Positions 39,757 through 51,242 of a DNA stretch of 64,000 nucleotides are shown here, piece by piece (the first letter of the stretch is position 1; each line of letters opens with the position of its first letter). The notes below the pieces were generated by a model. It made no database searches, was not told the origin of the DNA, and was given only the letters and a program-made list of their open reading frames with translations. Location: NCBI GenBank assembly GCA_964035545.1, contig OZ037766.1, forward strand, positions 6,624,722 through 6,688,721. The letters are read 5' to 3'. Both the position numbers and the translations under genes were made by a program. Source of the stretch: Bugula neritina. Lineage: Eukaryota; Animalia; Bryozoa.

Positions 39757-42700
39757 ATGAAGTTGAATAGATGCCTGCTGGTCTGTAGTGTTTTCATATC
39801 TCTTGTGGACTATGTCATCAGCACTTGTGGCTATGAGGTAAGCTGGTATATTGAACTGTTTAGCAGCAGTATTTTTAACAACCGTATTATACTTCTGTCA
39901 TTGTCTTGTACAATAAATATGATGTAAACATAATATTAAGACATATAAATTTTTATTGTTTGTGTTGGAGTGCAAATGCAGACATTTAAGTTTTAAAATA
40001 CATGTGCTGTAATGAGATTGAAACTGGTTTATATATATATATATATAACTTTATGTTCTTAGGCCTGCGATCTTGGCAAAGAAGGGATGATTAACGTTCA
40101 TTTGGTTCCACACACTCATGACGATGTTGGCTGGATCAAAACTGTTGATCAGTACTATGTAGATGGTTAGCGAGACTTCTGCTTATTTATTTAGATGTTT
40201 CATAACTTTCATATAATATCTGTAGGTACATAATATGAACTTGGAAGTTAACATATTATAGTAGTGCAGATTTATAATAGAAAACGTGTTTTAGATCACC
40301 AATTTATGAAATCGTAATTGAACTCTTGCCACTATAATTGTGAATTTTATGTAAGTGACAAGCTAAAACTTAGCACTCATGTTTTTTGTTGGTTTTTTAC
40401 TGTTGATCTTAGATCTTAGCTCATTGATTATGCTTCCAACTCCTGTGAAAATTTATAATATCAAGGCACCAAAAATATTTTCAATAGCGAGGGGGGAGTG
40501 TATTGCTCTTTGTCCATATGGGTTGCTGTATTGTAGAGGTGCAATACATTCTGGACAGTGTGGTCTTAGCCTTAGAGGCAAACCCAAAGAGAAAGTTTAG
40601 CTACGTTGAGACAGCATTCTTCTATAGGTGGTGGAATCAGCAAGATGATGCTGTAAAACTCAAAGTCAAACAACTGGTTAACAATGGTTAGTCATTTGGA
40701 AACTGATGTTCAATACAATACACACTGCTTAGACTGCATTATCATGTTGAGAACTCAAAGCATCTTTATTCTAGCATCAAGTCAAGTACTTTGTAAAAGT
40801 AGAGTATAAAATGTGTTATTTATAGGAATTACATAAATAATTATTTAGACATGTTTGCTCTGCTGTCTAATAAGATATTGTGACTGGCCTCCAAGTCAAT
40901 TGCCAATTTGTACTAAAACATTTATGCCTCATTCGCTCAACCACAAATGTCTATCAAGTGGGTTAACTTGTATATGGTCACATGATCTAATCACATGATT
41001 TAATTGATTCTAAGTTATACCAATATCATAGCTTGAAATTTGTTGATAAGTATAATGTTTTGGTGTTCAGCTTCTAGTAGAATAGCTGTTAGAGCCTATA
41101 TATAAAACTTTATTACTGGTACAACTGTTACATACTAAATATGAAACTGTAACTTATATAAAATACATAAGTAACTGAGTTTTAGCTAGAGGTTATGTAA
41201 GCAAGTTGTAAAGCTATAATTTTTGTTAAGATTTAAATTTCAAATCTTTTCAAAATTTTGCAGGGAAAATAATGTAATAATAATAATAATATAATAGAAT
41301 ATAGTCAATTGAGTGGTTATGGCTGTGTAGACTCTCTTACTGTTGTCATGACCTTCCATGGCGGTATATTATTAACACTTCAATTGCATGATAACAGGTC
41401 AGCTGAGCTTCATCCTTGGTGGCTGGTGTATGAATGACGAAGCAGCAACTCACTATAACGCTATAATAGACCAGCACACGATTGGAGTGAAATGGCTCAA
41501 AGAGAACTTTGGAGAATGTGGCAGACCTCTGGTTGCTTGGCAGATTGACCCATTTGGTCACTCCAAGGAACAAGCTAGTCTCTTTGCACAGGTTATTTTC
41601 TTTTACTTTACGATGGACTAAATTACGAAGGCTTGTTTCATACAATTTTTTACCTCTAAATTTGTGCTTTGAATTTATGATGCCATAATATCTGCATGTA
41701 TACAGTTTCTTTACAATAGTAAGTTTTGTAGATATATGCAGTGTTGCGCGCTGCACCTTTAAACAACAGGCAGCTTAGATTTGCATGTCCCAGTTTTGAG
41801 TCAACATAATTTGATATTAAAGAATGGGTTTCCAAAACTAGATGATATACATGTGTTTGGGTTACAGATGGGGTATGATGCTGTGTACTTTGCTCGAATT
41901 GACTACCAGGACTATGCAAGGCGCAAGAAAGATAAGGAGTTGGAGATGATTTGGAGAGCTAGCCCTGACCTCAATACGGAGCTGTTTGCTGGCGCCCTCT
42001 ATGGCCAGCACTACGGCCCTCCACCAGGAATGAACTTTGACATATACGCTCAAAATAACATACAAGTGAGTTCCTTGTTTACTACTAAAACTTTAACATA
42101 ATTAGGGCTGTTTGCAAATAATTTGTTATTGGTATCAATAGATATTTGAGAAGCCTGCTTTTTCATGCCATGTTATGTACTTGATGTGCTTTGCTGAATA
42201 TACAATCCTAATCCTACTATTGTATGCTGAGCAACAGATTTATTTATATATAGGTTAGTGGGGGGAGGAAGAAATGTTTCTTGAAGGTTACAGTAAGGTG
42301 TATGAACAATGTGAATGCGTTTAGCTAGGCTAATGTTCAACAGATAATATCACCGAAAAGAATCTTCTGCTTTTCACCTTAATACACTTTCTTGAGAATT
42401 ATATTTTGGTGCAGCCCTGAACAAGCTATCAACTCTTAAGTCTTTTGTCTGGCATATATTTTTATATCAATTATAGAAAAGGATGCTGCATTGGGTGTTC
42501 CAAAGTTCACATTTGTTGTTACAAGTTGGTTACTGGCTACAATCCCTACCATCAACATCTCTCATGTGATCTAAAATGACATCTGCCAATGACAGTTGTT
42601 TTTTACTTGTTGACATGTAGCAATAATATAGACTTCACAATGTAAACATGGCAATGACATAGAAATTGTGATGGGAGACTGATAATGTTGTAAATTTTTC

Positions 42701-45700
42701 AGTTTTATGATTAAATAATCTATGTTGGTATGTTAATTCATGACTTTACATTGATAAAAGCCATTTCACTTTGCACATACTTTCTCTAAGACTTTTATAT
42801 GACATGTATTTCAAGGTTGAGGGTGTTTGTTACATTTAAGTGCAGTAATAGAAAAATTTCATTAGCTCAAGTTCTTTTATTGTCTTTTTGGAAGTTGGTT
42901 TGAGGTGCAACTAGAAGTTCGAGAGAGAGAAAACATGATATATTTTGCTACATTTCTTATCTAGAACACACGCTATTCCAACTTTCTCCATTACTGCACC
43001 TACCTTGTTTATTACCTGCCTGATATGATAAACATAGGTTACATTGCGGGTGTATTTTACAGGACGACCCAAGACTACATGATTTTAATGTTGATGCTGT
43101 AGTGGCACAGGCCCTGAAAGATGCAACAGAGCAGGTTATTTATTCTCCTACCCTAATATACAATACAGGTTGAGATTCTGGGCTAAGTATTCCTTCTAAG
43201 GCTATATGTTATATTCTGTGTTTTTGTTAGATGAATATCTCTATCATTCACCTCTTATCTCTCAAGTACCCAGATTTTAGTTGATTTAGTGTTGTAATTG
43301 GATGATATGGAGATTAGGTAGATCTAACTTACCTCTAGTCTGCAGAATATATAGTTAGTATATCTATGCTTCAGTATATCTAGTTACACTGCAACCAATA
43401 CTTGAAGCTTTGCAAAGTCAATCGAGTTAAGCAGCTAACTGAGGAAAAAATGCAGCAATGTCATTGGTTGTTTTTACCAGGATGACTAATCCTATATTTA
43501 CTCAAGTGTCTAATATACCAGACTATTTTGTGTGTAAATGCAGATTACTTTGTGTGTAGATGCAAAAAACTTTGTGTGTAAATGCAGATTACTTTGTGTG
43601 TAGATGCAGAAAACTTTGTGTGTAGATGCAGATTACTTTGTGTGTAGATGCAGAAATCTTTGTGTGTCAATACAGAAAGCTTTTTATGTAGATGCAGAAA
43701 GCTTCGCAAAAATTTGGAAGACTTTGTGTATGAATACAAACTACTTTTTCTATAACTAAAAATTACTTTTGGATTTTTCCTGCCATATTTGTTGCTTAGG
43801 ATACTGACTTTAAACTACATTATCTTATGCAGAATGCGGCATACAAAGGCAATCACATCATGTGGACAATGGGGGACGACTTCACTTATCAAAATGCCAA
43901 CACCTGGTATAAGTCCATGGACATGTTGATACCAGCTGTAAATGCTAGGGTAAGCAAACTGATGCTATATGTTGTCACAATACTTTACTGGTCTATTGTA
44001 GAATGCTGCCTATCGGGGAGGCCATATTATGTGGACAGAAGGCATGGACTTCAACTATCAAAATGCCCAAACATGGTTTAAAAACTTGGACAAACTTATT
44101 CCTTACACTAACCAGAGAGTACGTGACGTTTAAATGCTGCTCCTATCACAGGATATTAATTCCGTTAGCTACAGGCTGATTACACTTCATACTCACAGCA
44201 AAAATTCTTCTGCTTTTTAATTTATTTTAAAGCGCTGTCAATCTTCTTCCATTAGATTTTAATTTTATTGGTTGATATGATTTCTTTCAACATAAAATTA
44301 TGCCTGCAAATCTATATGACTTATCACCTTGTCTGATCTTGTAACATAAAAATATGTAAAACTTACAAGTGTTTACCACACTGTACAAATTTTATATTTA
44401 AATTGATTGGATTCCATCAGCTACAATGTGTTGTTACAGCAAGCTAATGGCAGTAAAGTGAACCTCCTTTACTCTACACCTGCCTGCTACACGTATGCTA
44501 AGAATAAACAGAACGTTACATGGAGCACCAAGTCGGATGATTTCTTCCCATATGCTGACAGAGTACACGGCTACTGGACTGGGTATTTCACCAGCAGGGC
44601 CGCTCTCAAAGGAATGGTTCGAGATACCAACAACTTTCTACAGGCAAGATGTGGTTGTTTATTCTAAGTCAATATTGCTACACAGCAATTCTTCCTGTTG
44701 ATGCTTACTTGTAATTTCTCTGCATATGGAGATTGTATCATGTTTGCTAAGAAGTTGCAAGGTAATAAAGAGGAAATTCCACCCATATGCTGGTTGACAG
44801 TGTGATATGTATAGAGGGGAAAACTCCAGATTGTTTTGTTTGTTCTGTATAATTTATCTTGTAATGTACTCTTTACACAGGTTGCTAAGCAACTCGATGT
44901 CTTAGCCAATCGAGGAGCTGATCGCAGTAGTGACTCTGCCCTAGATGTACTTAGTAAGTACTTTATTTTTTAGAAAATGTGATAAAAATATGTAACTCTA
45001 AATTTTCTCAGCTCTTGATATGTAAAGACACGTATTTTCAATGAATTGCACCAAGTTTTATAATAAAAGCTATTCGATTAAATACGTTGACAGAGCGAGC
45101 AATGGGTGTGGCACAGCACCATGATGCAGTGAGTGGCACTGCTAAGCAGGTTGTTACGTATGACTATGAGGAGAGGCTAGCTGATGGTGTCAATCAATGT
45201 ATGGAGTTGGTGAATCATGCCTACCAAAAGCTGACAAATTCCGTCACCACCAGCTTTACACTGCCTACTCAGGAGTTATGTCCCTTGGCTAATATCAGCA
45301 TGTGTAAAGCTGTGGAAGCAAGCTCCTCCGTAAGTTGTGTAAAGAGAGTATATTTTGTTTGCTTATACCTGTTTTATGGCATTTTAATTGAGTTATATAT
45401 AACTGAATGTTGCTTAATTTTCAAGCTTTCTTGAAGTTCATAGAATGCACATATAGTGGTGTTTAGTAAAAGTGATGTGCAAAGGAAGGAGGTTGTTAAA
45501 ACTTAGTAAGAGCAGCAAATATTCATGCTTGCTCACAGTTTAATATTTAATTTGCTGAACAGTTTGGGATAATCGTATACAACCCACGGGGACAGAGTAC
45601 CCGCACGATGGTCAAACTTCCAGTTAGTAGTGATAAACTCAATGTCACTGATGCTCAGGGAAACCCTTTACAAGTCCAGGTATATTGTTCTTCTGCTACA

Positions 45701-48700
45701 CATAACTGTGCTTCACATAGGGTTTTTGAATGCTCATTATTCTATTATGGTCAATTTTTAAAGTCTTTGTTTTGAAAAATGTGTTACTTTTGTTATAAAT
45801 TTGTTGCGAAATTTATCTAAAAGTAGAACAGTTTCTATTTAGCCAATTTTAGTTTAGGTTTTTAGAAATGTTTGCTTTGCTCACATAATTTTCTATTTTG
45901 TTAGTAATTTTTGTGTGCTGCCATGTTTTAACAATTGAACTAAAGTTGATTGTCACCATTTAATTTTATATTCTCTTTCCTCACAAATATTAAACTTTCC
46001 ACTTCCCAGTTTACTGAGGTGAGTGCCAGAACTAAGAAGATTCCGGAGAGAAATGGCAGCGTTGCGACTCATGACATGTGGTTCACTGCTCAGTTGCCTC
46101 CTCTTGGCTTCTCCACCTACTTTGTTAGTGCCGCATCACGGTCCTCTCTCACTAACAAACTTGTGAAGGTCAAACCTGCATCTGATGTCGTCATATCTAA
46201 TGATGTGAGTTGTGTTCTCTATTTATTGTATAAAATCGATGCTCTAGATTCCCTCTGCTATAATTTATTGTTGCAATATCAGTGAATAATGTTATACACT
46301 GGTTTACCAAAGATTTGAATACATATCGTTCCCAATTTTATTAAATTATTTTAAATTGTTGATAATATTTACGCTAAAAACTTATGATTTGTTGTATAAA
46401 TCTGTTTTTACGACAATTTCAATTGAACCTCTATTTAAAGTTTCAATAGGGTTACATATACACTGAATATAATGCTTCGGTTGTGGGATGGCTTACGAGG
46501 GTCTCCTTATAAAATGATCATCAAGTCTCATTGACACTTTCAGTTGCTGGAGGTAATATTTGATGGCACAACTGGACTACTCAAGCAGATCAGTAATCTG
46601 AAGAGTGCCGTGAAGATGAAGGTTAAACAAGAGCTCATGTTCTATGTTGGCTGGGATAAATATTCGGGGGCCTACAAGTTCCGACCCAAATCACAGAGTC
46701 CAACCCAACTCAGCCAGACAGCTAAAGTACAAGTATTCAAGGTAGGTCCAAGTTGTCAAGCTGGTTTATGTATGTTTTAGATACTTGCTAATCCTAGTTT
46801 CTAGCATTTTCTAACAACTTGCAATGTTTTCAATGTTTCTCTCACTCACACACATTTGTTTAAAATATTCATCTCTGTGAAAACCCCCTATGCATATATG
46901 TTGTTACATGCCGAGTAACCGTTCACTATGCAGTAGCAGCATTTGAAACAATCCTAGAACTATTAAAAATGTGTAAAAGAAAACTCCAGCCACAACTTAC
47001 ATAGACTCATAACATGTTAAATGCTTGCCAAGAGAATTAAACTGTGTTGTGTATATGTTAAATTGGCACTTTTTGCTCCTTTACTTGTTGTTCCTTTTGT
47101 TTCTTTTTATTGTTGGTGTACTTTCTTGTGTATAGTTTTGCCTTACATATTATATATTTTGTATGTGGCTACAGTGCCTTGTTTCCAAATTATGGTATTG
47201 TATTATATTATATTATTATATTATAGGGCTCGCTGTTTACTGAGGTTAGGCAGACATTCACCAACTGGGGAACTCAAGTGTTCAGACTTGGTCGAACAGC
47301 CAATCACATTGAGCTAGAGTGGACTGTAGGCCCGATACCTTTCAAGTAAGAGTACAAGCTCTTGCGTGTTCATATGTCGTCCTTGTTTTTACTGCAGCAA
47401 AAGACACTTGGCAATATATAAATATGTGTATGTAATTTATAGAGTAAAAACTCAAAAGCATTTGTTATCTAGTACTAAAAAGTTTTATGTTTGCTAAATA
47501 TATTATACAAAGGCGTGAACATCAGAACAATAAGGCCTTTGTGTTTTGTAAACGTATCATGCAAGGTTGGAAAACTATTTGACTGATATTTAGATGCAGT
47601 AGTGGAGAAATTGAGATAGCCTAAGTTCTTTAAATTACTTTATAGATTTTTGTTTGGGGCATAGGTTGAAATTTTTTGCGAGAACATAACTTCTTTTGCT
47701 ACATTTTAATCTAGAACACAGGCTTTTCTCAATTTCTCCATTACTTCACCTACTGACTGAGCAATCTTCTTTTACATTGTAAAGTATATTTCACAAAACT
47801 TCGTGATTGTTAGAAACAGGAGTTCTCGAGCTTTTTAATGGTGCAGCAGTGTTGAACAGCTGAAGAGCTATAATATTTTGTCACATCTATAGACCAAAAT
47901 AGTCACAAGCTGTACATGTACAAGTCCACCGGGCTATTTTTGTGAACCCTATATATTCTATTCTTTCAATCTTTATGAGCATTAGTGATTATATTATGAG
48001 TATGGCCTGCTTCCACTAGTTATTAGTTGTAGCCAATAAATATCACACACAGTGTAAAAGGATCGCAGTAAATAGTATAGTATAGTATAGTATATCGTCT
48101 CCTTTCGTGCAGCTGAATAAAGTGCATTTCTCTCTCTGCTGCAGTGGAACTATAGGTAGAGAGGTGATCAGCCGATTCACAACCGATCTCATGTCTCAGG
48201 GCGCCTTCTACACAGACTCTAATGGCAGACAGATTCTACAACGCCAGAAGAATTTCAGACCTACTTGGACCTTAGACGTAAATGAACCGGTCTCTGGAAA
48301 TTACTACCCTGTCAACAGCCGAATTTACATCCAGGTAATCATTTGTGAATATGCATTGCTGATGTTTTCCTGTATGATATTTAGTCAACTCAAATTACAC
48401 ACCACAAAACCTGGCTTATAGTGCTCTGAGGGGTTTCTTGAGGGCACTCTTGCCAAATGTATTAAAAGAAACAGAATTTGTTTTGGGGAGGACATCTCTG
48501 ATGAGCTTTTTCTAATTTCACGTATTGAGCATGCCTAGCATGGGCTGGTCTTGGCTTTGGATTTCATAAAAATCCTTGGCATCTGATATACATAATACTA
48601 CTTATTTTTTACATCAATAAGATTCATGCAAACTACACTCTACCATGGCTCACTAATTATATCATATCATATAAGCTATGTATTTTGCTATGTATTGGAA

Positions 48701-51242
48701 AACATATTCTTTACTGAAATATTTTGCCAATGAATTCAATTTTTTTTTATTTTTCAAGTTACGCTGAAGTTTTTTCACCTTGGTTAGCTTTAGTCTTATG
48801 TGGATGTTAACTAGCTGGAATAGTCTTAAGTTGTTAATTACAATCGATATTAATGGACACAATCAAATCTTTGCATAGTGGTGATAAATTTTGCCTGAGA
48901 GAAACAATTTTAGTTTCTACTTAATTATTTATGGCTAATGTGGCTAAACTTTCTTGATGTGCAAATTGTGTGTTATGTATGTTTTGTTTTTAAATCTAAT
49001 CATAATGAATATTGTAACACTGTTCATATCTCTTCCAGGACTTGAAGAGATCTTGCCAGTTTACTATTCTAACAGACCGGTCTCAGGGTGGCACCAGTGT
49101 TGCTAACGGATCTCTGGAACTCATGGTTTGTTCACTGCTATGAACTATAATACTGTGGAACATCAGCATGCTGTTGTATTTCGTTATTGTGATGTTTTAA
49201 ATGAGTTTTTCAGGTATTTATAAATAATAATGTCTCAGTATCACCATTTGATGTTTAATTTATCTTATCATAGATTCACTTTTGTAGCAAAAATCGTAGA
49301 GACAAATGTGTATAATCGGAGCTTCTTTATTGGACTTGTCCAATACACTTTATTGTACAATCAATAATATTTTAATTCAGCTTCACCGAATGACAACATC
49401 GGATGATTCGCTGGGAGTTGGTGAAGCCCTGCAGGAGAAGGGTTCTGATGGAAAGCCTTTGATAGTGAGAGGTTCGTGTGCAGCTAAAATGTCATGGCTT
49501 TCAGTATTCAGCTTTATATGAAAGTCATTCATTGATATTGACAAAATTTTTATACCCAACTGTTTTTTATTTTGTTTTGATTTTCAGTTGAGGTGAATAG
49601 TTTAATTGCTTATATTTCAAGGCATAGTAAATTAGACAGCTTGTATCTTGGTAAGAATAAAGTTGAAGGTATGTGACTGTAGGTAAGCACTACTTGGTGG
49701 TTGATACAATCGCTGCCTCTGCTGCCGTACACAGAGAACTGGCTCAGCGGTTGTTTATGGCTCCAGTTGTCACAGTTTCTAAGACTACTCCGGCTGTTAT
49801 AGACAAATGGAAGAAGTACCTCACACTTCGGGTATGTGTTCTATACTCTTCAGGTTCTACACGGTGATTTTACTCTACATAATCTACACATCCTACACTT
49901 TCTACATTACATTCTACACACAATGCACACTACAGATGCAATAACCACTCTACATACTATAATCACATCAGGCTATATGCCTGCAGTGTGTTTTGTGGAC
50001 AGACTTCATATTTGCGGGACTGTCTTATTTCTGACTTCTATTAAACTGATATCATATTCTATGGAAATAAGTATAACAATTGTGTTGGCTCTAATTTTAT
50101 AGCCAAATAAAAAAACTTCTTGTAAATAGAAAGAAACTGCAAAAAGTTGTAGGTTTAAAAAGACTTATAAACTCAATTAATGAACGTATAAATATGTAGT
50201 TAGTTGTTAAATCAGTTTTCTAATTCGTTAACTTAACAGTATGCTTGCAAGTTGCAAAATCTTGCAAATATATAGTATAATAAGTTTTTTAGGGTACACT
50301 CGGCGCAAGGGTATATATATCTCTGATACTTAGACTTGCGTATATAGACTATTTATTAGATCTACTATATGGTATATTTATGTACGTCTTGTAGCAATCA
50401 TACATTAGAACTGCACTACCAGATAATGTTCACCTTCTGACCCTGGAATCCCTTGGAAACAACCAATTGCTTCTGAGACTGGAACACTTCTACTCTCTGA
50501 ACGAAGACAGCTCTCTGTCTAAGAATGTCACCGTCTCACTACAAGTAGGTGGCTGAGCTATGGCTAGGTCAAGGTTATGTGAGTTTGGAAGTGGGCGTAC
50601 TGATAGATCTTCAGCTGTTATATTGGGCTTGTTTGTTGTGATGATCACGTTGATGGTAAAGTATAATGATTGCATTTCTTGCAGGACTTGTTTAGTACCC
50701 TGACTATAAAATCTGTGAAGGAATTAACTCTGGAAGCTAATCAATATCTAGAAAATGCACAGCGACTCAAATGGAACAAGAAGTCTTCTAAACGAGGTAA
50801 TATTCAGGCTAAGTCACTGATTGTATAAATCTTTCTTCTAGTATAATATTCCAGTGTAATATTCTGAAATTGAAAAAAAATTAAGATTTTAAAAATTTCC
50901 TTTCTGGCAAAGTCATATACATTAAATTTTGTTTCAGTCTTTATCTAACATCATTAGTGTTTGCTGATAAAAAATATGTTATATTTTTAACTATATTTTA
51001 GTCTCAAAATATCTTAGTCATTGGTGATGAATTTATAATCATTGCTCTAACTAGATAAATCATTGGTGTAAGAGATTTACAAAGTTTGAAGCCATGTTGT
51101 TGTAGTTATTGAATTGCATGTACTTGACTTTTAAACTAATCTACAATGATGAAATTTTGTAGATTATCGTCCAATAGGAGATGACTTTGCTATTGAACTT
51201 AGTCCCATGATGATTCGTACTCTGGAGGTTACATTCCAGTGA
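39757..51242 (+). CDS. MAN2B1: Lysosomal-type alpha-mannosidase (GH38), 971 aa with one version of exon 7; exons 39757-39837, 40063-40165, 40537-40686, 41398-41591, 41868-42065, 43063-43134, [43833-43949 or 44002-44118], 44440-44643, 44881-44953, 45094-45329, 45563-45679, 46010-46204, 46544-46741, 47227-47345, 48145-48334, 49039-49125, 49381-49471, 49683-49831, 50395-50544, 50685-50796, 51163-51242
   Basis: Signal peptide, PHTHDDVGW (Zn ligands), [22 protein letters not shown] (nucleophile), [43 protein letters not shown]. Confidence 0.96.
42837..43002. mobile_element. ~165-bp MITE, copy 1 (TIR ~GGTGCAGTAATGGAGAAA, TA-flanked)
   Basis: taagtgcagtaatagaaaaa ... tttctccattactgcaccta; internal sequence similar to the copy at 47591-47752. 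Confidence 0.7.
43528..43703. repeat. 22-bp minisatellite (~8 copies, TTTGTGTGTAGATGCAGATTAC-like)
   Basis: Tandem array ending ~130 nt upstream of MAN2B1 exon 7a. Confidence 0.9.
43833..43949 (+). CDS. MAN2B1: MAN2B1 alternative exon 7a ([39 protein letters not shown])
   Basis: CAG acceptor, GTAAGC donor, 117 nt, phase 0/0. Confidence 0.9.
44002..44118 (+). CDS. MAN2B1: MAN2B1 alternative exon 7b ([39 protein letters not shown])
   Basis: TAG acceptor, GTACGT donor, 117 nt, phase 0/0; homologous to 7a and not shown in this frame in the ORF track. Confidence 0.9.
47591..47752. mobile_element. ~160-bp MITE, copy 2
   Basis: tagatgcagtagtggagaaattgagatagcctaagttct ... agaacacaggcttttctcaatttctccattacttcaccta, an imperfect ~38-bp TIR pair. 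Confidence 0.7.

What the first reader, a model, noticed from the sequence alone, without database searches (positions are those of the whole stretch)
43833..44118. Mutually exclusive tandem exons swap the catalytic acid/base loop of a lysosomal alpha-mannosidase
Seen: two homologous 117-nt phase-0 exons, both stop-free with good splice sites, many synonymous differences and a conserved core (NAAY.G.HIMWT.G.DF.YQNA.TW.K..D.LIP..N.R). They are 52 nt apart, whereas the shortest other introns in the conserved genes here are ~108-117 nt. Known: the Asp of GxDF is the GH38 acid/base residue (TMGSDF in human MAN2B1, PLGDDF in fly Golgi mannosidase II). The two exons differ at the neighbouring residues: TMGDDFT (GMII-like DD) versus TEGMDFN. 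Inference: steric mutually exclusive splicing makes two enzymes with different linkage specificity or pH optimum from one gene, and including both exons would duplicate a barrel strand and helix. I am not aware of this being described for GH38.
Basis: partly seen in the sequence, partly recalled or inferred. Interest (0 to 1): 0.85.

Follow-up and report, generated by a model that had tools for sequence, protein, structure and literature searches.

The report
Swappable catalytic loop in lysosomal mannosidase
A moss animal's gene for the lysosomal enzyme that trims mannose from sugar chains uses one of two alternative exons for its catalytic loop, and spiders, prawns, insects and clams show similar exon swaps at or beside the same sugar-binding pocket, so these animals probably make differently tuned enzymes from one gene.

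Summary
Observation confirmed. Exons A (43833-43949) and B (44002-44118) are open 117-nt phase-0 duplicates, 52 nt apart, in a 971-aa MAN2B1-type GH38 gene, probably of a bryozoan. Contigs from four RNA studies (run type guessed by the tool) join each exon directly to the flanking exons at similar depth; no A+B or skip-both joint is listed. Both keep the acid/base Asp (jack bean Asp268, human Asp319). They differ at the human Met316, Ser318 and Gln321 positions; published structural comparisons place the last two in a non-conserved leaving-group pocket. Two other putative bryozoans keep both exons (spacers 45 and 32 nt) with the same MGDDF versus TEGMDF split; B is the more constrained. Corrections: 'DD' is not Golgi-specific (jack bean has it), and fly LManII is already listed as a gene with tandem-exon substitution. 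New here: the loop is also duplicated in a spider and in pancrustaceans, and molluscs swap the neighbouring loop of the same pocket. Different substrate or pH preference is inferred, not tested. The scan had not noted this gene elsewhere.

The parts
39757..51242 (+). MAN2B1-type (lysosomal) GH38 alpha-mannosidase gene; 21 coding exons per isoform, 971 aa
   Evidence: Open local model with either exon; 54.6% identical to Lingula lysosomal alpha-mannosidase over the full length; several internal joints seen in RNA contigs. First exons and 3' exons are predicted only.
41547..41549 (+). Codon of the predicted nucleophile Asp162 (IDPFGH motif), in a constitutive exon shared by both isoforms
   Evidence: Motif position in the model; role from established GH38 knowledge
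43063..43134 (+). Upstream constitutive exon (72 nt), spliced to A or to B
   Evidence: Loose ends of A and B contigs match its 3' end
43833..43949 (+). Mutually exclusive exon A (motif TMGDDFT); acid/base Asp codon 43878-43880; same borders as human MAN2B1 exon 7 and the single Lingula exon
43950..44001 (+). 52-nt GT-AG spacer, probably too short to be spliced; 45 and 32 nt in two related species
   Evidence: no A->B joint; 52 nt also in a sister lineage
44002..44118 (+). Mutually exclusive exon B (motif TEGMDFN); acid/base Asp codon 44047-44049; Glu at the human Met316 position and Met at the human Ser318 position
44440..44643 (+). Downstream constitutive exon (204 nt), joined from A or from B
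   Evidence: Joints and loose ends

Best explanation
The single MAN2B1-type gene carries a bryozoan-lineage tandem duplicate of the ancestral 117-nt exon that encodes the acid/base strand-loop-helix. Each mRNA takes A or B (shown by RNA contigs), most likely because the 32-52 nt spacer is too short for the spliceosome to join A to B (inferred). Both 971-aa products keep the shared nucleophile and the acid/base Asp, so both should be retaining alpha-mannosidases (inferred). They differ beside the acid/base residue: Met/Glu at -3, Asp/Met at -1, Thr/Asn at +2. Positions -1 and +2 correspond to Asp340 and Arg343 of Golgi mannosidase II and Ser318 and Gln321 of the lysosomal enzyme, which line the non-conserved leaving-group pocket. 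The most likely result is two co-expressed enzymes with different preference for the sugar beyond the cleaved mannose (linkage or branch) and/or a shifted pH profile, widening what one gene can digest (inferred, untested).
For: RNA bubble in four studies, with A:B contig depths 93:102, 45:38, 107:58 and joint depths 1374:1128 (depth is a rough measure). Both exons are kept in two other species with the class-specific motifs intact; pN 0.05-0.10 for B and 0.17-0.24 for A against pS 0.7-0.9. All A and B differences in a sister lineage are synonymous. Residue roles from PMC13204073. Human S318L folds but has 32% activity and lies 9.3 A from the zinc (PMC11931667), so position -1 affects catalysis. 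Glu at -3 occurs in none of 285 non-bryozoan homologue segments, where Met is 275. Parallel swaps: Macrobrachium and Palaemon MGMDFH/MGEDFN, Uloborus MGEDFH/MGNDFN, Iphiclides three copies; Mya and Haliotis swap the preceding loop that carries the other pocket residue.
Against: No enzyme data for either isoform. Position -1 varies freely among single-exon homologues (Ser, Asp, Glu, Thr, Met, Gly, Asn), so a difference there need not mean a new specificity. The isoforms also differ in the following helix, which could matter more for stability. A:B ratios are near 1:1 in bulk samples and no tissue switch is shown. No coordinates were available to place the side chains.
Confidence: 0.6

Rival explanations
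1. Both exons are used either-or, but the two enzymes are catalytically near-equivalent. The pair persists through subfunctionalisation or small differences in stability, metal binding or proteolytic processing, and the short spacer merely prevents harmful double inclusion.
For: Position -1 is variable across homologues. Near-equal use in bulk RNA. Earlier scan notes report many such pairs in this genome (unchecked), so retention may be easy here.
Against: The TEGMDF motif of B and the MGDDF motif of A are each invariant across three species whose synonymous sites are near saturation, and B is more constrained than A. The same pocket is the target in several phyla.
Confidence: 0.22
2. The swap mainly changes sensitivity to natural inhibitors (dietary or microbial iminosugars and similar compounds) or serves a secreted gut versus lysosomal role, with unchanged linkage specificity.
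For: The Asp270-Asp340 versus Asn262-Ser318 pocket is the one used to make inhibitors selective between GH38 enzymes (PMC13204073). Lysosomal alpha-mannosidase is found in spider digestive fluid (PMC5013568).
Against: No inhibitor or tissue data for this animal; both isoforms share the N-terminus and every other exon in the model.
Confidence: 0.1
3. Isoform B is a low-activity or binding-biased form: the bulky Met beside the acid/base residue and the new Glu slow turnover, so that it acts on a narrow substrate or modulates the dimer.
For: The human hydrophobic change S318L is a disease allele with 32% activity. Glu at -3 is unique to B among the fetched homologues.
Against: B keeps the acid/base Asp. 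Met at -1 occurs in 9 of 285 other homologue segments, including a prawn isoform.
Confidence: 0.07
4. Not true alternative splicing: an assembly artefact, allelic bubble or two paralogous genes.
For: The RNA evidence is from assembled contigs of a related lineage, not raw reads, and the tool only guesses that the runs are RNA.
Against: The tandem layout is in independent DNA contigs of a sister lineage and of two other species. The contigs skip introns at GT..AG borders. No second MAN2B1-type copy was found in the assembly.
Confidence: 0.01

Closest known systems
[quoted passage not shown]
   Same: Lysosomal GH38 alpha-mannosidase gene with homologous alternative exons. Other pancrustacean loci fetched here duplicate the exon holding the same GxDF loop.
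   Different: The papers give only the gene name, with no exon, residue or function, and I could not view the fly gene, so that it is the same loop is inferred. Pancrustacean copies are 134 nt with other borders and shift frame if both are included; the bryozoan copies are 117 nt, in frame, and carry TEGMDF, not seen elsewhere.
Human MAN2B1 / bovine LAMAN (PDB 1O7D) and jack bean alpha-mannosidase (PDB 6B9O)
   Same: Same family and catalytic motifs; exon A matches jack bean [10 protein letters not shown] exactly; the exon has the length and register of human exon 7.
   Different: No MAN2B1 hit in the human tandem-exon paper's supplement; vertebrate hits are almost uniformly TMGSDFQ.
Active-site mutually exclusive exons of enzymes: OGDH 4a/4b (PMC7969005), coq-2 (PMC7434440, title and abstract only), PKM (from memory)
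   Same: Duplicated exons used either-or to retune an enzyme; OGDH exclusion is enforced by a 5'ss-to-branch-point distance under about 50 nt.
   Different: Here the whole spacer is only 32-52 nt, the swapped segment holds a catalytic residue of a glycosidase, and the functional difference is not yet measured.
Golgi alpha-mannosidase II (Drosophila; Asp340, Asp341, Arg343)
   Same: Exon A shares Asp at -1.
   Different: Exon A has Thr, not Arg, at the Arg343 holding-site position; the exon's only PDB hits are jack bean and bovine lysosomal enzymes. Other GH38 genes lie elsewhere in the assembly.

Membership tests
Mutually exclusive tandem duplicated exons | Adjacent homologous exons of equal length and phase with intact splice sites | tested here: met
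   117 nt each, phase 0, AG/GT, 26/39 aa identical
Mutually exclusive tandem duplicated exons | Each exon spliced to both flanking exons in RNA | tested here: met
   162-nt contig pairs in three runs and joints in a fourth
Mutually exclusive tandem duplicated exons | No joint between the two exons and no skipping of both | tested here: met
   None listed in four runs; contigs drop rare forms, so low-level leakage is not excluded
Mutually exclusive tandem duplicated exons | Both exons under purifying selection across species | tested here: met
   pN 0.05-0.24 versus pS 0.7-0.9 in three species
Steric-hindrance class of mutually exclusive exons | 5' splice site to branch point distance below about 50 nt | tested here: inconclusive
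   Whole spacer is 52, 45 and 32 nt, so the distance must be below 50 nt, but no branch point was mapped and the threshold comes from other animals
RNA-pairing (docking/selector) class of mutually exclusive exons | Conserved competing intronic base pairs | tested here: not met
   No shared inverted repeat or conserved intron block in three species; flanks only partly covered
Lysosomal alpha-mannosidase MAN2B1 subfamily (GH38) | GH38 N-terminal domain with zinc-ligand, nucleophile and acid/base motifs | tested here: met
   PF01074 hits on the window's exons; HTHDD, IDPFGH, GxDF and QHHDA motifs present
Lysosomal alpha-mannosidase MAN2B1 subfamily (GH38) | Best full-length matches are lysosomal alpha-mannosidases | tested here: met
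   51-55% identity to Lingula and Haliotis lysosomal alpha-mannosidases; exon PDB hits 6B9O and 1O7D. The comparison set was seeded with lysosomal-type queries.
Lysosomal alpha-mannosidase MAN2B1 subfamily (GH38) | Acid pH optimum, lysosomal location, alpha-1,2/1,3/1,6 exo-activity | not testable with these tools
   Needs expression and assay
Golgi alpha-mannosidase II | Arg343 in the holding site next to Asp340-Asp341 | tested here: not met
   Thr (A) or Asn (B) at that position

The most novel reading that the evidence does not exclude
The leaving-group pocket of lysosomal alpha-mannosidase is a repeated target of exon duplication in invertebrates: the acid/base loop in bryozoans, a spider and pancrustaceans, and the partner loop in molluscs, arising separately at least three times. 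Each event gives linkage- or pH-distinct enzymes from one gene, with Met beside the acid/base Asp (a position where Leu causes human alpha-mannosidosis) reached twice. The isoform pairs would be natural one-loop experiments on GH38 specificity.
Probability: 0.4. Interest if true: 0.68.

Novelty: new variant of a known kind. Interest (0 to 1): 0.52.

Why it matters
What sets linkage preference, pH optimum and inhibitor selectivity among GH38 mannosidases is an active question, for example in making Golgi-selective inhibitors that spare the lysosomal enzyme. Isoform pairs that are identical except for the loop lining the selectivity pocket test this directly. Their recurrence in several phyla suggests that animals gain from having more than one version of this pocket, by splicing rather than by gene duplication. 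The mechanism class itself (mutually exclusive active-site exons) is well known, which limits the surprise.

Tried and rejected
1) A possible 32-nt exon at 40466-40497 with a 41-nt intron, which would have weakened the steric argument: rejected, because the sister lineage breaks its frame and a direct 40165->40537 join is in frame. 2) A CTGAT branch point 13 nt into the spacer: not conserved (CTGGT in the sister lineage), so not claimed. 3) Conserved RNA pairing around the exons: none found. 4) An ancient lophotrochozoan pair: Lingula has one exon with the same borders; Mya has one complete copy plus degenerate partial repeats. 5) Formal proof of independent origin: the six bryozoan exons form one starred clade (98/95), but AU tests on 31 columns did not reject shared origin with arthropod exons (p 0.12 and 0.07). 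6) Paper searches for mannosidase with mutually exclusive exons, for LManII splicing and for bryozoan splicing found no functional study; Hatje and Kollmar 2013 and Nemcovicova 2013 are not held. 7) A Pfam scan of typed exon ranges failed on a coordinate slip and was replaced. 8) Following the operators' note, the joined spliced protein was not sent to any search or folding tool; exons were searched singly by reference, and the joined model was used only inside local scripts for frame checks and local BLAST. No structure was predicted.

Full report
What is there. The window holds a GH38 alpha-mannosidase gene on the + strand, CDS 39757-51242. A local model of 21 exons gives 971 aa without stops with either exon A (43833-43949) or exon B (44002-44118). 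It is 54.6% identical to the Lingula lysosomal enzyme along its length. The assembly is 216 Mb in 321 contigs. The closest related locus comes from a sample labelled BRYA and earlier scan notes call the animal a bryozoan; from memory the size fits Bugula neritina. The identity is therefore an inference. Other GH38 genes lie on other contigs, but only two copies of this exon were found and no second close copy of two flanking exons.

The observation. A and B are both 117 nt, phase 0, open, bounded by AG and GT, and 52 nt apart. They share 71/117 nt and 26/39 aa; third positions match at 15/39, so the duplication is old. The other introns of the model are 140 nt or longer. I first suspected a 41-nt intron near 40498, which would have made 52 nt look spliceable. 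A sister lineage breaks that candidate exon and a direct join is in frame, so I dropped it.

Splicing. I laid contigs from four runs of four studies on 41300-46300. The tool only guesses that they are RNA, but they skip introns at GT..AG borders. They come from a lineage mostly 95-99% identical in exons. Three runs each contain two 162-nt contigs, one with exon A and one with exon B, whose loose ends match the end of the upstream exon and the start of the downstream exon (all four ends are listed for two runs; the list is cut for the third). The fourth run shows A->44440 and B->44440 joints. Depths A:B are 93:102, 45:38, 107:58 and 1374:1128, so both forms appear major in bulk samples, with the caveat that contig depth is a poor measure of level. 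No A->B joint and no skip-both joint is listed. Since A+B and skip-both would stay in frame, nonsense-mediated decay cannot be what removes them. The spacer is 52 nt here, 45 nt in L003 and 32 nt in L006, so any branch point lies under the roughly 50-nt steric threshold cited in PMC7969005. I found no conserved RNA pairing. Steric exclusion is the best reading; it is inferred, not shown.

What is swapped. Exon codon 16 aligns with jack bean Asp268, the acid/base residue equivalent to Drosophila Golgi mannosidase II Asp341 (PMC13204073). Human exon 7 runs c.910-1026, also 117 nt, with Ser318 at codon 15 and Asp319 at codon 16 (PMC4465300; PMC11931667). Both exons keep this Asp. They differ at codon 13 (Met/Glu), 15 (Asp/Met) and 18 (Thr/Asn), and in the following helix. 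Codon 15 is one half of the Asp270-Asp340 versus Asn262-Ser318 pocket that separates Golgi from lysosomal enzymes, and codon 18 is the Arg343/Gln321 holding-site position. The human change S318L leaves a folded enzyme with 32% activity. In 285 non-bryozoan homologue segments codon 13 is Met in 275 and never Glu; codon 15 is Ser 190, Asp 27, Glu 25, Thr 21, Met 9. B is the unusual form; relative to A it moves the acidic side chain from -1 to -3 and puts Met next to the catalyst.

Conservation. Two other loci, most likely other bryozoans (L003, L006), have the same two exons in the same order with MGDDF in A and TEGMDF in B. Between species B has pN 0.05-0.10 and A 0.17-0.24, with pS 0.7-0.9. 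In a sister lineage all exon differences are synonymous. Lingula has a single exon with the same borders, so the pair probably arose within bryozoans; the six bryozoan exons form one starred clade.

Parallel cases. The search with exon B returned many proteins read through two or three copies. Genomic loci show tandem copies in the butterfly Iphiclides (three; MGEDF, MGDDF, MGGDF), the prawn Macrobrachium (MGEDF, MGMDF), an unnamed insect-like contig (19-nt spacer) and the spider Uloborus (MGEDF, MGNDF). RefSeq lists equal-length isoform pairs that differ only in this stretch for two Macrobrachium species, Palaemon and Uloborus. The pancrustacean copies are 134 nt with other borders (read directly in L005; from the donor sites printed for the others), which argues for a separate event. 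The spider copies have the ancestral 117-nt borders, and AU tests on 31 columns did not reject a shared origin, so independence from the spider pair is likely but not proven. In Mya and four Haliotis species the isoforms instead swap the preceding loop, which carries the human Asn262 position, the other half of the pocket; Mya has four tandem copies of that exon.

What is known. Drosophila LManII (FBgn0027611) appears in the fly lists of Lam 2021 (PMC7954323) and Martinez-Gomez 2022 (PMC9741552). Those entries name the gene only. I could not view the fly exons, and found no paper that ties such exons to the catalytic loop or tests the isoforms; two relevant papers are not held. Mutually exclusive exons near enzyme functional sites are a known class (PMC7954323).

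Verdict. The exon pair is real, expressed either-or and conserved. It most likely yields two active lysosomal-type mannosidases with different leaving-group pockets (confidence 0.6); near-equivalence (0.22), inhibitor or compartment tuning (0.10) and a weak B form (0.07) remain open. It is a new variant of a known kind. The added value is the B motif and the recurrence at one pocket across phyla, which gives ready isoform pairs for testing GH38 specificity.

Noticed in passing
window 40165-40537: The simplest join removes 8 residues of the loop that other lysosomal mannosidases have between YY and VQYILD (gap against Lingula). Either this enzyme has a short loop or a micro-exon is hidden; a 24-nt candidate at 40262-40285 has the right length but a weak donor and little similarity.
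   Followed up: partly
L011:5239-8611 (Mya arenaria); Haliotis isoforms P0203, P0285-P0293: Molluscan lysosomal mannosidase genes carry two to four alternative copies of the exon before the acid/base exon (Y-G/Q/S-PP loop); RefSeq isoforms swap it.
   Followed up: partly
L011:10409-11561: Six partial, degenerate tandem repeats of the 5' part of the acid/base exon upstream of the intact copy in Mya.
   Followed up: no
L007:5974-6448: An unidentified eukaryote from a metagenome has a tandem pair of a longer exon (about 190 nt) that includes the acid/base loop, both MGSDF, separated by a 94-nt CT-repeat intron; possibly a further independent duplication.
   Followed up: partly
L005:727-1013: Insect-like contig in which the two 134-nt copies are only 19 nt apart.
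   Followed up: partly
window 43527-43704: A 22/44-nt minisatellite in the intron before exon A; a contig of run X1 lacks 122 nt of it, so its length varies between lineages.
   Followed up: no
window 44644: The exon after the pair appears to end at a GC donor (CAG/GCAAGA); the model stays in frame and RNA contigs show a joint across this intron.
   Followed up: partly
G000:C196:7290-8093: A GH38-like match with many stop codons on a separate contig, probably a broken copy or another lineage's sequence.
   Followed up: no
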